64,000 nt of DNA, taken from the NCBI GenBank assembly GCA_964106915.2, contig OZ066914.1, one strand, 5' to 3'. Shown piece after piece: positions 33,001-35,900 of the stretch. Source of the DNA: Podarcis gaigeae (Eukaryota). A program made the position numbers and the translations under genes. The notes beneath the pieces are model-generated. The model made no database searches, was not told the DNA's origin, and saw only the letters and a list, made by a program, of their open reading frames with translations. The number at the start of each line of letters is the position of its first letter. Position 1 is the stretch's first letter.

Positions 33001-35900
33001 ACTATGTATATTTACTATCTTTTTAAAGTTAAATTTTAATTTTTCTTAGATCTACAAGTGAGCACAGATTTTCTTTACCCATTTCAGAACAAGGCTCTTG
33101 TGCCTTGTAGCTTTTTTGAACGGGGAAAGTTGTCAAGAGCTGTAGAGTCTTCTAATGTGCAAGCATTATGAAGAGAGAATCTGTAACTATGAAACTTTCC
33201 TCTCTACTCCATTTAAAACTCACACATAAAGGTCCAGAAGTCCTATCCTCTGTGTCTGATGGCAAAGTGGGTACCAAACAGTTGATGTCAGATTGGCTGG
33301 TACATGCAGGAATTTTATGAGATGCTAATGGTTATGGTGAAACCAGGCCTAGGTATGTTTTGGAAGGGATCCGAGGCAAGGATGCTCATTGGCCTCTCTG
33401 TTGGGTAGGGTGCCATGCATTTAAGTAGAGATTATTGACCCGAATTGTATTTTCAGTTGTGGTGGGTGGGATTTCATAAAGCAGCAGACTCCTTTTCATT
33501 AAATAAATTCTGCCACATTCAAAAACTTGGTCTACCGGTGAGCAGCTAAACTGAAGCTGTGTAGTTACAGGGAGTGAGTGATGCTGCTTTAGCCAGCCAA
33601 GTTTTGTACATGCATTGAGGGTTAATACATAGAGGCTGGGAAAATAAGAACATCTCTTTCATCTCTAGGTCCTGCCCCACTGCCCCTCACTCCAGTCATG
33701 AACTCTGTGCAGGTAAGGATGCTCTCCTCTGCCACCTTCCGTCTGCGAGGCCTCCTATCTGTGTTCTGCTTTTTGCCTCCTTGGAGTTGACAGGTGGCGT
33801 ATTTTTCTATCTTTCTGTTTGGCTGCTCTCTCTTTCTCTCAACCCTGCTTTTCCTCTCCCACAGGTGTGTGGCTTCCCAAAGCCCCCTGCGAATATGCTG
33901 AACTCATTCTCGGCAACGGTGAAGTCTCCTCCGCTTGCCTCTGCTGCTGCTTCCCCTGACACTGGTAAGCTGGCTCAGGAGTGTGCAAAGTCACTCGGCC
34001 TCTCTTCTTAGCAATATCTCATCCGCTTTCACTGGATTGGTCTATATGCCGTGCCAAAGTAGAAACTGAATACACACCTTAAGAGGAACTCACCTACCCC
34101 AGTATTTTTGGGATTATTTCAGGTGCCAAAACCAAGGAGAGAGCTGAGGACAACACTCTCTGCAAACCCCAGGAAGTGGACAAATGCTGTACTGCCAAGG
34201 TAATAAGAATACCCACACCACTGTACCCCATCTTGTTGGCTTGAGCGTTGTGGGAGAAGACATCTTTTCTCAAAGATGATAGCCAAAGGTGTAGTCGCCT
34301 GGCAGTGTCTCAAATCATGGCTTGATTGGCTCTTGCAGGGAAGTCGCAGATCAACACTTACCTCGGCTGACTATGCCCGCCGTAGGGTCATCAGCTCCGG
34401 CTTCAACACTCTTGCCACTCTGGTGTTGACAGGACCTGATCAAAGCAGCACTAAGGTATGCATCCCCCCCTGTACCAGAGGGTGGAAGGGCACATATTCT
34501 CTGCTGTTTGTCCAGTCCTCCCAATTTGCTTTGTGAACCTGCTGGAGCCATTCTTGTGGTCTTTGCCCTCCCAATCCATTTTACGCCTTTACTCCACCCC
34601 CTCACCTCCCCAGTTCAGCAAAGCGATGCTCCTGCAGAAAAGTGCAGCACATGTGGAAAGACTGCAGCAAGAGCGCCGACAAGCTCAGGAGACAGTTGAA
34701 AGACTACGTGGGGAAATCAAAGAGCTGAGCACTGCCATTGAGTGAGTTGCGGGGCTGGCTTAAGGGGTTTTCATTGGATCAGGGATACAAGTTAAAAGGT
34801 GAGAGGGGAACTCCTGTCAACAAGTTGTGGCTTTTCTCTTCCCTGCAGTGACTTTCAGCGCCAGCTTCCACCTACGGGAGCTCCTGTGCTGCCACCACAG
34901 TCAGATCAGGCTTCTCAACTCTATGAAGAGTATGTGCGCAAGCGCACCCTGCAGGACTGGCGCTTCTGGCTTGTATCCACCAGCGAGCATGTGGGATGGG
35001 ATGGGATGGGACAGGTTAGGGTGCAAGAAAGCAAGCCAGGGGAGGTATTTGGCATGGCATTAGTGGCCTGCTGGGTGCTTAAGGGGAGCAAGGAGACTTG
35101 GCTGCATAGGCTCCTTAACCTCTTCCAACCTGCAGTTCAGCATGGTGATTAAGCCACTCTTTGAGAGCTACACCAGGACAGTGAGCACAGGCAACGTCAA
35201 GGAATTCTGTGACTCAGTGTTGAGCTGGTTGGAGCAGCACTGCACCCTGCCCATCTTGCGCCCTGGTATGGATCAACAGGGAAATCTAGAAATGTCTTTC
35301 CCTTCACTGACCCATCTCTCCCCCCCCCCCCCATGGCTTTTAATGATCCTTGCCTACCTTCTTCTCTGAAATCTAGCACGTGCTTGTGTATCATTCACCC
35401 ATCCTACTCCTGCTTGAAGTACTCTTATGTTCACACATAACTAAGAGAGTGGAGCAGAACCATGGCTTACCAATTATACTCCACATTCCCGATTCCCTTT
35501 TCATGCCTTGCTAAGTTACTAGACACAGTTGCCCATCACTATGATCCTTTCCTTGCCCTGAAGCAAGATTATTGGGTACTGCCTTAAAGCAAGGCCCAGA
35601 TGTGACCTTAGGAGTTACCTGGCTTTGTGGTGTTTAGGAAAAATCTAGCTGGAGATGCCAGCTGTTCTCAAAAGTCTTCTATTCCTGATACTTCCAGAAG
35701 ACTTGAAAGGATTCTCTTTCTAAGAATTAGGAGAAAGGGTCTGCATTGAGTTCATTGTTTTGGTTTTTTGTCCCACAGCTATCTCTGGCTCCCTCCTGCA
35801 GCTAAGCAAGATCACATCCATACTGACTCGGCCAACCCAGTTGCGTGAACAAGCCCTGCAAGCAGTAGCTGGCCCTCCACACTACAAGAGCAACAGCTAG
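23478..35900 (+). CDS. MondoA/ChREBP (MLXIP/MLXIPL)-family bHLH-ZIP protein, divergent paralogue (759 aa, 17 coding exons)
   Basis: join(23478..23863,27828..27934,28336..28418,28519..28608,29217..29258,29433..29586,29824..29916,31120..31157,31403..31847,33669..33712,33865..33964,34123..34199,34339..34455,34614..34741,34849..34972,35136..35265,35779..35900) = 2280 nt, open and phase-consistent. Mondo conserved regions: IIHSGHFMVS (MCR1), IDPSLTKLFECMTLAYS (MCR2), KLVSPKWKTFKGLKLLQRDKIRLNNAIWRAWYLQY (MCR3), VCSFVTPL...EGKYWKR...REYHKWR (MCR4), NADMIQPTL (MCR5). These are followed by a Pro-rich middle, the HLH-ZIP (SKAMLLQKSAAHVERLQQER) and the DCD/WMC (QLPPTGAP...RTLQDWRFWLFSMVIKPLFESY...WLEQHCTLPILRP). 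There is an alternative in-frame start at 23526. The small middle exons are less certain. Confidence 0.9.
32196..32569. mobile_element. Tc1/mariner-type MITE with an internal LINE-tail fragment
   Basis: TA-CAATGGTACCTCG...AAGGTACCACTG-TA termini; internal TGTAAGCTGCCTTGAG...AAGGCGGCATACAAATAAA LINE-like 3' end. Confidence 0.65.
34973..35135 (+). other. U12-type (minor spliceosome) GT-AG intron
   Basis: 5' site GTATCCAC; branch point TCCTTAAC at 35112-35119, 16 nt before the intron end; lies between the RFWL and FSMV codons of the DCD. Confidence 0.75.

What the first reader, a model, noticed from the sequence alone, without database searches (positions are those of the whole stretch)
34339..34455. 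bHLH basic region has lost its E-box-reading His and Glu: possible Id-like dominant-negative Mlx partner
Seen: the basic region reads SRRSTLTSADYARRRVISSGFNTL. It aligns without gaps to ChREBP NRRITHISAEQKRRFNIKLGFDTL (from memory), giving His->Leu (codon 34357-34359), Glu->Asp (34369-34371) and QK->YA. Established: His5/Glu9/Arg13 make the base contacts to CACGTG in Myc/Max/Mlx-class proteins, and Glu9 is critical for E-box binding. Helix 2, the zipper and the DCD remain intact. Inference: the protein can still dimerise with Mlx but binds ChoRE/E-boxes poorly or with altered specificity, so it could titrate Mlx away from MondoA, ChREBP, Mxd and Mnt.
Basis: partly seen in the sequence, partly recalled or inferred. 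Interest (0 to 1): 0.85.

Follow-up and report, generated by a model that had tools for sequence, protein, structure and literature searches.

The report
Third Mondo paralogue with non-canonical basic region
This lizard exon belongs to a third, apparently undescribed sugar-sensor (Mondo) gene that mammals lack, and its DNA-reading segment has carried the same unusual residues (Phe/Leu for His, Asp for Glu) in nearly all 43 land-vertebrate species compared, so it probably reads DNA differently from ChREBP and MondoA rather than being broken.

Summary
Exon 34339-34455 (+) encodes a basic-helix1-loop segment. Leu (34357-34359) sits where Myc/Max/Mlx-class proteins have His5, and Asp (34369-34371) where they have Glu9. 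The two arginines at positions 12 and 13 are kept.

The gene is neither ChREBP nor MondoA. It is a 17-exon third Mondo paralogue lying between an SSH3-like gene and POLD4. Databases auto-name it "MLX-interacting protein-like". It occurs in squamates, tuatara, turtles, crocodilians, ratites, caecilians, salamanders and lungfish, next to canonical ChREBP and MondoA genes in the same species.

- **Conservation:** across 43 tetrapod species position 9 is Asp in 42, position 5 is Phe or Leu in 35, and Arg12, Arg13 and Ile16 never vary. A lungfish member still has His and Glu, so the change dates to the tetrapod stem.
- **Activity:** the gene is transcribed and spliced as predicted, and dN/dS is about 0.2.

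The "Id-like" reading is only partly supported: an Id-like null would not keep an invariant Asp and arginines. I favour altered or weakened half-site reading in a heterodimer with Mlx. Dominant-negative titration of Mlx is the main rival. Mlx pairing and DNA binding are untested.

The parts
34339..34455 (+). Exon 13 of 17: basic region, helix 1 and loop of the third Mondo paralogue
   Evidence: Splice sites and translation. RNA joints 34199|34339 and 34455|34614. Alignment A1.
34357..34359 (+). CTT, Leu at basic-region position 5 (His in canonical Mondo, Max and Mad)
   Evidence: In 43 tetrapod orthologues this position is Phe 29, Leu 6, Ser 4, Pro 3, His 1.
34369..34371 (+). GAC, Asp at basic-region position 9 (the Glu that contacts DNA bases in canonical proteins)
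   Evidence: Asp in 42 of 43 tetrapod orthologues and Asn in emu; the lungfish member keeps Glu.
34378..34383 (+). Arg-Arg at basic-region positions 12 and 13, retained
   Evidence: Invariant in alignment A1 and in 43 of 43 orthologues.
23478..23862 (+). Exon 1: start codon and Mondo conserved regions I and II
   Evidence: 97.7% identical to Podarcis raffonei P0123.
27826..27933 (+). Exon 2: Mondo conserved region III (the 14-3-3-binding region in ChREBP and MondoA)
   Evidence: 30 of 35 residues identical to MondoA and to ChREBP.
28338..28596 (+). Exons 3 and 4: conserved region IV and the following conserved block. Boundaries are approximate and an intron lies at about 28419-28518.
29214..29915 (+). 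Exons 5-7 at about 29214-29240, 29427-29585 and 29820-29915; the last carries conserved region V (GNADMIQP). Boundaries are approximate.
31120..31157 (+). Small exon 8
   Evidence: The loose-end consensus of RNA reads lying before 31399 was located here with 3 mismatches, flanked by ag| and |gt.
31399..31847 (+). Exon 9: proline-rich central region
   Evidence: RNA depth, read ends at 31399 and joint 31847|33669. tblastn.
33669..34199 (+). Exons 10-12 at about 33669-33708, 33861-33964 and 34123-34199
   Evidence: RNA joints. tblastn.
34614..34741 (+). Exon 14: helix 2 and start of the leucine zipper
   Evidence: RNA joints 34455|34614 and 34741|34849.
34849..34972 (+). Exon 15: end of the zipper and start of the DCD
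35136..35265 (+). Exon 16: core of the DCD (dimerisation and cytoplasmic localisation domain)
35779..35900 (+). Exon 17: C-terminus with stop codon TAG at 35898-35900
   Evidence: RNA joint 35265|35779.
16823..21280 (+). 3' part of the upstream Slingshot-type phosphatase gene (SSH3-like): DEK_C exon and long tail exons
   Evidence: Pfam DEK_C. The orthologous loci have a 757-767 aa gene with PH_SSH1-like, DEK_C and DSPc domains directly upstream.
39871..42375 (-). POLD4 (DNA polymerase delta subunit 4), convergent downstream neighbour
   Evidence: ORFs. Pfam DNA_pol_delta_4 at 46.4 and 19.2 bits. Same neighbour in L003-L006.

Best explanation
The exon encodes the DNA-contacting segment of a third vertebrate Mondo paralogue, called M3 here. 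M3 is a sister gene of MondoA (MLXIP) and ChREBP (MLXIPL). It lies between SSH3 and POLD4, survives in lungfish and non-mammalian tetrapods, and was not found in mammals. On the tetrapod stem its basic region changed from the canonical His5/Glu9/Arg13 to a new fixed state: Phe or Leu at 5, Asp at 9, Arg12 and Arg13 kept. That state has been held by selection ever since.

Shown: the gene is intact, has 17 coding exons, is transcribed and correctly spliced, and is under purifying selection. The N-terminal glucose-sensing module, helix-loop-helix, zipper and DCD are all conserved.

Inferred: the protein still pairs with Mlx through the HLH-zipper-DCD. In that heterodimer Mlx reads a canonical CAC half-site. 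The M3 arm keeps backbone and Arg13 contacts, but Asp is one methylene shorter than Glu and cannot make the normal contact with the CA core. The dimer should then prefer asymmetric or relaxed sites, or bind classical ChoRE/E-boxes more weakly. It would act as a glucose-regulated modulator with its own target set, not as a null Id-like trap.
For: - **Separate paralogue.** Three gnathostome clades each have 100% SH-aLRT support. The MondoA clade includes sharks and excludes M3. An AU test rejects M3 as a sarcopterygian-specific duplicate of MondoA (p = 0.0005).
- **Coexistence.** Canonical ChREBP and MondoA occur beside M3 in ostrich and Microcaecilia, and canonical ChREBP occurs beside M3 in Rhineura, Dermochelys, Chelonia and Rhinatrema.
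- **Synteny.** The order SSH - M3 - POLD4 holds in two lacertids and a skink. Emu has ANKRD13 - SSH - M3 - POLD4 - GLYAT-like - CNTF-family gene. The window shows the same neighbours.
- **Fixed state.** Asp9 in 42 of 43 species; Arg12, Arg13 and Ile16 in 43 of 43; Ser7 and Met14 in 38 of 43; position 5 is Phe or Leu in 35 of 43. Lungfish P0186 keeps His and Glu and matches the whole Pfam HLH profile at 40 bits, against 23 bits from position 12 onward for the lizard orthologue.
- **Expression.** Stranded RNA-seq reads and transcript contigs show every predicted junction from exon 9 to exon 17.
- **Selection.** dN/dS summed over exons is 0.20, 0.22, 0.26 and 0.18 against P. raffonei, Lacerta, Tiliqua and emu. 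For the bHLH exon against Tiliqua, pN is 0.139 and pS 0.389.
- **Precedent.** Glu9 makes the strongest base contact, and all bHLH factors that bind the CA core have it. bHLH-PAS partners with Ala or Ile at position 9 bind non-canonical half-sites together with ARNT (PMC8431614). Glu9 is held in place by a salt bridge to a neighbouring Arg (PMC3714592). The invariant Asp9 and Arg12 could preserve such a pairing.
Against: - No binding data exist. DNA binding, Mlx pairing and transcriptional output were not and could not be tested here.
- The N-terminal half of the basic region (positions 1-6) is loosely conserved. It carries prolines in salamanders, caecilians, crocodile and ostrich, which fits reduced major-groove engagement and favours the dominant-negative rival.
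- Asp9 and Arg12/13 could be kept for reasons unrelated to DNA, such as helix capping or nuclear import.
- The trees used the 'quick' search and M3 sits on long branches. The branching order of the three clades is unresolved (support 80 or lower).
- The match to human 11q13.2 gene order rests on my memory of that map.
Confidence: 0.55

Rival explanations
1. Id-like or dominant-negative partner. M3 dimerises with Mlx, but the heterodimer cannot bind ChoRE/E-boxes productively. M3 would then titrate Mlx away from MondoA, ChREBP, Mxd and Mnt, possibly in a glucose-dependent way because the sensing module is intact.
For: His5 and Glu9 are both absent, and Glu9 is the key CA-core contact (PMC8431614). 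Positions 1-6 of the basic region are variable and often contain proline. The Pfam HLH profile no longer matches the basic part. HLH, zipper and DCD are conserved. An engineered dominant-negative Mlx is an established tool in this network (reference 8 listed in PMC11900861). NCBI gene models in snakes and turtles include isoforms that skip this exon in frame (P0130, P0132, P0156, P0152, P0170, P0172).
Against: Asp9, Arg12, Arg13, Ile16, Ser7, Met14 and Ser17 are invariant or nearly so across 43 tetrapods. A functionless basic region would be expected to drift, as positions 3-6 do. The protein is about 760 aa with a full regulatory N-terminus, unlike small HLH-only Id proteins. No skipping joint (34199 to 34614) was seen in the RNA laid here, though depth was low.
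Confidence: 0.27
2. Functionally near-normal Mondo factor. Asp9 substitutes adequately for Glu9, for example through a water-mediated contact, or because the ChoRE heterotetramer tolerates weak inner half-sites. M3:Mlx would then activate ChoRE genes much as ChREBP does, and the paralogue would differ mainly in where and when it is expressed.
For: Asp keeps the carboxylate, and Arg12 and Arg13 are intact. Some teleost MondoA proteins also have Leu or Phe at position 5 while keeping Glu9, so His5 is not indispensable in this family. The conserved glucose-sensing module and the purifying selection suggest an ordinary sensor role.
Against: According to the review, no bHLH factor that binds the CA core lacks Glu9. 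MondoA and ChREBP keep Glu9 without exception in every sequence inspected, from lamprey to mammals. The switch coincides with a long tetrapod-stem branch (0.34-0.38 substitutions per site), which suggests a change of function.
Confidence: 0.15
3. Artefact or decay: a sequencing error, a private variant, a pseudogene, or simply the lizard's ChREBP or MondoA orthologue misread.
For: Automated annotation calls these genes 'MLX-interacting protein-like'. Bird copies look degraded: emu has Asn9 and has lost the upstream arginines, and the king vulture model is flagged LOW QUALITY.
Against: The same residues are found in 43 species and the same sequence in RNA contigs of related lizards. The reading frame is intact across 17 exons. 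dN/dS is about 0.2. The clade and locus are distinct from both ChREBP and MondoA.
Confidence: 0.02

Closest known systems
ChREBP (MLXIPL, MondoB)
   Same: Same domain plan: conserved regions I-V, central proline-rich region, bHLH-zipper and DCD. The basic-helix1-loop exon aligns without internal gaps. Same 17-coding-exon plan that PMC4766361 describes for the ancestral Mondo gene.
   Different: Separate clade and separate locus, and canonical ChREBP coexists with it in the same species. ChREBP has His5, Glu9, Gln10 and Lys11; this gene has Leu/Phe5, Asp9 and a variable 10-11. Identity in the bHLH exon is 20 of 39 residues.
MondoA (MLXIP)
   Same: The N-terminal exon is more MondoA-like, including the YDFDTV motif (49 of 128 residues identical, against 38 of 128 for ChREBP). 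The DCD is similar.
   Different: The MondoA clade, including sharks, excludes it, and the AU test rejects nesting inside sarcopterygian MondoA. It lies between SSH3 and POLD4, not in the BCL7/CLIP/VPS37 neighbourhood that PMC3177325 describes for Mondo genes. The basic region is non-canonical.
Lungfish member of the same clade (P0186, nearest named relative Protopterus annectens P0352)
   Same: Sister to all tetrapod members with 100% support. Shares the helix 1 and loop signature GF.TLASLVLP.
   Different: Keeps His5 and Glu9 and matches the whole Pfam HLH profile. It represents the state before the switch.
Id/Emc class D HLH proteins and engineered dominant-negative Mlx
   Same: The idea of a partner that dimerises but cannot contribute a working basic region, and so removes the common partner from DNA.
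   Different: Id proteins lack a basic region altogether and are small. Here the region is basic, and half of it is invariant across tetrapods. The protein is about 760 aa with sensor and localisation domains.
bHLH-PAS class I partners (HIF-1alpha, SIM, AHR) paired with ARNT
   Same: A partner lacking Glu9 but keeping Arg13, paired with a canonical Glu9 partner, gives an asymmetric dimer on a non-canonical half-site (PMC8431614). This is the best analogy for how M3:Mlx may work.
   Different: No PAS domains and a different family. Those proteins have Ala or Ile at position 9, not Asp. This is an analogy only, not membership.

Membership tests
Mondo family (MondoA/ChREBP-type bHLHZ glucose sensors) | N-terminal Mondo conserved regions I-V (glucose-sensing module) | tested here: met
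   All motifs can be read in exons 1-7. Exon 2 is 30 of 35 residues identical to both MondoA and ChREBP.
Mondo family (MondoA/ChREBP-type bHLHZ glucose sensors) | Helix-loop-helix followed by a leucine zipper | tested here: met
   Pfam HLH scores 23.0 bits (cut-off 20.7) on the full-length lacertid orthologue P0123, covering profile positions 12-53 only. Helix 2 and zipper exons are about 50% identical to MondoA and ChREBP.
Mondo family (MondoA/ChREBP-type bHLHZ glucose sensors) | C-terminal DCD shared with Mlx | tested here: met
   Exons 15-16 align with 19-23 identical residues out of 41-43 to MondoA and ChREBP, including the W.FW and KPLFES motifs.
Mondo family (MondoA/ChREBP-type bHLHZ glucose sensors) | Canonical class-B basic region (His5, Glu9, Arg13) | tested here: not met
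   Leu5, Asp9 and Arg13 in the window. Asp9 in 42 of 43 tetrapod orthologues.
Mondo family (MondoA/ChREBP-type bHLHZ glucose sensors) | 17 coding exons | tested here: met
   Seventeen exons located by tblastn, RNA joints and motif search. The ancestral count comes from PMC4766361.
Mondo family (MondoA/ChREBP-type bHLHZ glucose sensors) | Obligate heterodimerisation with Mlx and binding to ChoRE | not testable with these tools
   Needs co-IP, EMSA or a complex model with DNA. Structure prediction here folds single chains only.
ChREBP (MLXIPL) orthologue | Groups with ChREBP in a tree and is the only ChREBP-like gene of the species | tested here: not met
   Separate clade with 100% support. Canonical ChREBP is present in the same species, for example Rhineura P0346 beside P0117 and ostrich P0269 beside P0169.
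MondoA (MLXIP) orthologue | Groups with MondoA in a tree | tested here: not met
   The MondoA clade (sharks to mammals) excludes it, and the AU test gives p = 0.0005 against nesting with sarcopterygian MondoA.
Id/Emc-type dominant-negative HLH | No conserved basic region N-terminal of helix 1 | tested here: not met
   Arg12 and Arg13 in 43 of 43 species, Arg2 in 36 of 43, Asp9 in 42 of 43, Ser7 in 38 of 43.
Id/Emc-type dominant-negative HLH | Blocks DNA binding of its partner | not testable with these tools
   Needs EMSA and reporter competition assays.

The most novel reading that the evidence does not exclude
An ancient third Mondo sugar sensor evolved a new DNA half-site specificity on the tetrapod stem (Asp9 with Phe/Leu5). 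Jawed vertebrates inherited it, and among the species sampled it survives only in lungfish and non-mammalian tetrapods. With Mlx it would form an asymmetric heterodimer comparable to HIF/AHR-ARNT. It would then control a glucose-responsive set of genes, separate from the ChoRE set, that mammals have lost.
Probability: 0.3. Interest if true: 0.85.

Novelty: new variant of a known kind. Interest (0 to 1): 0.68.

Why it matters
The Mlx network is normally described with two Mondo partners. [quoted passage not shown]

A third, selectively maintained partner would compete for the single Mlx protein. Its DNA-reading residues were replaced in one step and then held fixed. That changes how sugar sensing should be modelled in reptiles, amphibians and ratite birds.

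It also offers a natural experiment on what Glu9 and His5 contribute to E-box reading. The pre-switch (lungfish) and post-switch (tetrapod) proteins are both available for direct comparison.

Finally, it is a warning that automated "MLXIP-like" labels in sauropsid and amphibian genomes do not mean ChREBP.

Tried and rejected
- **PDB search with the exon alone:** gave only a spurious WD-repeat hit. A longer piece of the orthologue was needed.
- **Pfam on single exons:** mostly coiled-coil noise.
- **Two calls (7, 10):** failed on frame errors and were corrected.
- **The look-up of encoding contigs:** no record for P0169, P0117 or P0137, so ostrich, Rhineura and turtle synteny was not obtained. 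Emu, a skink and two lacertids were used instead.
- **Species of P0186:** a paper search for the run accession SRR6291289 found nothing. The lungfish assignment rests on its 73% identity to Protopterus annectens P0352.
- **Literature on Glu-to-Asp substitutions in bHLH basic regions:** nothing in the held library.
- **Literature on a third Mondo paralogue:** nothing found.
- **Exon-skipping isoform:** looked for the joint 34199 to 34614 in the RNA and did not see it, but junction depth was only 2-8 reads.
- **Pseudogene, private variant or mislabelled ChREBP/MondoA:** considered and rejected (see rival explanations).
- **Structure prediction:** not run, because the tool folds single chains without DNA and could not separate the hypotheses.
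- **Joined exons:** the window's exons were never joined into a spliced protein for any search or script. They were used one by one by reference, and database orthologues P0123 and P0124 served as full-length proxies.
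Full report
**1. The observation.**
Window 34339-34455 (+) is a clean exon (ag|…|gt, phase 0) of 39 codons. Leu falls under His, Asp under Glu, and Tyr-Ala under Gln-Lys; the following Arg-Arg is invariant. phmmer against PDB sequences aligns the same stretch of the lacertid orthologue to Mad in the Mad-Max-DNA entry 1nlw_A. The Pfam HLH profile sees only positions 12-53 in this protein: 13.3 bits for the exon and 23.0 bits for full-length P0123. It sees positions 1-53 in a squamate ChREBP (50.1 bits) and in the lungfish relative (40.1 bits).

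**2. What the gene is.**
The exon is exon 13 of a 17-exon gene on the + strand, running from 23478 to 35900. The gene encodes:
- the Mondo conserved regions I-V;
- a proline-rich centre;
- basic-HLH-zipper;
- the DCD.

Each was searched by reference.

Exon 1 was searched against 1.84 billion representative proteins. The best long hits were full-length proteins of about 770 aa. A search with the best of them (P0002) showed a well-populated group that databases auto-name "MLX-interacting protein-like". It includes squamates, tuatara, turtles, a crocodile, ostrich, emu, caecilians and salamanders. These score 530-1460 bits, against about 470 bits for true MondoA.

The window's exons are 95-100% identical to Podarcis raffonei and Lacerta agilis proteins, so the window comes from a lacertid, most likely a Podarcis species.

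Canonical ChREBP and MondoA genes exist beside this gene in the same species:
- ostrich: P0269, P0222 and P0169;
- Microcaecilia: P0247, P0383 and P0183.

Canonical ChREBP exists beside it in:
- Rhineura: P0346 beside P0117;
- Dermochelys, Chelonia and Rhinatrema.

Maximum-likelihood trees give three gnathostome clades, each with 100% SH-aLRT support: MondoA (including sharks), ChREBP, and this third clade, which I call M3. Their mutual order is unresolved. An AU test rejects M3 as a sarcopterygian-specific duplicate of MondoA (p = 0.0005).

The sister of all tetrapod M3 proteins is P0186, a transcript-derived protein. Its nearest named relative is Protopterus annectens, at 73% identity.

**3. 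Locus.**
Upstream in the window is a Slingshot-type phosphatase gene (DEK_C exon and tail exons). Downstream on the minus strand is POLD4, followed by two GLYAT-like genes.

| Species | Gene order |
|---|---|
| P. raffonei, Lacerta agilis, Tiliqua | SSH - M3 - POLD4 |
| Emu | ANKRD13 - SSH - M3 - POLD4 - GLYAT-like - CNTF-family gene |

From memory, human 11q13.2 reads ANKRD13D-SSH3-POLD4-CLCF1 with nothing between SSH3 and POLD4. ANKRD13A and SSH1 lie on 12q24 with MLXIP. Both points fit a 2R ohnologue lost in mammals, but this step rests on recalled map positions, not on a tool result. A sister note of this scan (s1-704120) makes the same third-paralogue claim, and my tests agree with it.

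**4. Is the odd basic region private, erroneous or decaying?**
No. The residue counts at each basic-region position across 43 tetrapod species are:

| Position | Residues |
|---|---|
| 5 | Phe 29, Leu 6, Ser 4, Pro 3, His 1 |
| 7 | Ser 38 |
| 9 | Asp 42, Asn 1 (emu) |
| 12, 13, 16 | Arg, Arg, Ile in all 43 |
| 14 | Met 38 |
| 17 | Ser 39 |

Positions 1-6 are looser and sometimes contain proline. Lungfish P0186 still has His5 and Glu9. The switch therefore happened on the tetrapod stem, a branch that is also long (0.34-0.38), and the new state was then kept.

NG86 counts were made per exon and summed without joining sequences:

| Window compared with | dN/dS |
|---|---|
| P. raffonei | 0.20 |
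| Lacerta | 0.22 |
| Tiliqua | 0.26 |
| Emu | 0.18 |

For the bHLH exon against Tiliqua, pN is 0.139 and pS 0.389.

RNA evidence comes from a stranded RNA-seq run and three transcript-contig sets from related lizards. They show junctions 34199|34339, 34455|34614, 34741|34849, 34972|35136 and 35265|35779, and the upstream ones. First mates lie on the minus strand, as expected for a + strand mRNA. One contig covers 34337-34453 with no differences.

**5. How it probably works.**
Established background:
- Glu9 makes the strongest base contact, and all bHLH factors that bind the CA core have it.
- The exceptions are Id proteins, which have no basic region, and bHLH-PAS partners such as HIF-1alpha, SIM and AHR. 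These carry Ala or Ile at position 9 and bind non-canonical half-sites together with the canonical partner ARNT (PMC8431614).
- Glu9 is oriented by a salt bridge to a nearby Arg (PMC3714592).

In M3 the carboxylate is kept but is one methylene shorter. Arg12 and Arg13 are intact, and position 5 is hydrophobic.

My inference, at about 0.55: M3 still pairs with Mlx through its conserved HLH-zipper-DCD and still lies on DNA. It cannot read a canonical CA core, so the heterodimer has an altered or relaxed half-site preference and weaker affinity for classical E-boxes and ChoREs. The near-invariance of Asp9, Arg12/13, Ser7 and Ile16 argues against a functionless, Id-like region.

It is supported by the loss of both base-reading residues, the proline-bearing N-terminal half of the region, the precedent of engineered dominant-negative Mlx (reference list), and predicted exon-skipping isoforms in snakes and turtles. 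Near-normal ChoRE binding stays possible, at about 0.15. Artefact or pseudogene is excluded for squamates.

**6. Comparison and novelty.**
The protein meets every structural criterion of the Mondo family except the canonical basic region. It fails the tests for being ChREBP or MondoA. It is not Id-like by architecture or by conservation. In mechanism it most resembles the non-Glu9 partners of ARNT.

The papers I could search describe two Mondo paralogues and single-copy Mlxip and Mlxipl genes. None mentions a third one or an Asp9 basic region. The sequences are public but mislabelled. I rate this a new variant of a known kind.

**7. Limits.**
- Trees used the quick search and include long branches.
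- Absence from mammals, frogs, most neognath birds, ray-finned fishes and sharks is inferred only from their not appearing among the top database hits.
- The tissue of the RNA runs is unknown.
- Mlx pairing and DNA binding are untested.

Noticed in passing
Proteins P0190-P0227, not in the window: MondoA of many neoavian birds (Corvus, Grus, Calypte, Apus, Buteo and others) appears to lack one residue inside the basic region, reading HIS-EQKRR or HLS-EQKRR instead of HISAEQKRR. That would shift the register between His5 and Glu9. Anseriform MondoA keeps the normal length but has Arg for His5. Ostrich and turtles are canonical.
   Followed up: no
Proteins P0194, P0205, P0208: Some teleost MondoA proteins (Xiphias, Toxotes and an unnamed Logan transcript) have Leu or Phe at basic-region position 5 while keeping Glu9. 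His5 is therefore not invariant even in canonical Mondo proteins.
   Followed up: no
Proteins P0130, P0132, P0156 (snakes) and P0152, P0170, P0172 (sea turtles); equivalent to skipping window 34339-34455: Database gene models include isoforms that skip the 117-nt basic-helix1-loop exon in frame and join the preceding exon directly to helix 2. No such joint was seen in the lizard RNA laid here, but depth was low.
   Followed up: partly
Proteins P0180 (emu), P0070 (king vulture), P0145 (Pelusios): Bird copies of the third paralogue look eroded. Emu has Asn at position 9 and has lost the upstream arginines. The king vulture model is flagged LOW QUALITY and lacks helix 2 and the zipper. The turtle Pelusios has His at position 5 again.
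   Followed up: no
window 39871-42375 (-) and about 42900-43750: POLD4 lies tail-to-tail with the Mondo gene. A GC-rich island (GC about 0.55) sits at its 5' end. The P. raffonei annotation draws POLD4 as overlapping the 3' half of the Mondo gene.
   Followed up: partly
window 51229-51783 (+) and 57775-58281 (+): Two tandem glycine N-acyltransferase-like (GLYAT) terminal exons (Pfam Gly_acyl_tr_N and Gly_acyl_tr_C). Emu has a GLYAT-like gene at the same relative position.
   Followed up: partly
window 49482-50021 (+), 63423-63722 (+), and 55983-56330 (-): The two + strand ORFs begin with the same roughly 50-residue peptide. The third ORF, on the - strand, ends in a peptide that resembles one in a - strand ORF overlapping the first copy. 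This is probably an interspersed repeat.
   Followed up: no
window 23273-23431 (+): The Zootoca isoform P0122 has an N-terminal extension matching an upstream ORF here (88.7% identity over 53 residues). This suggests an alternative upstream start or an annotation artefact.
   Followed up: no
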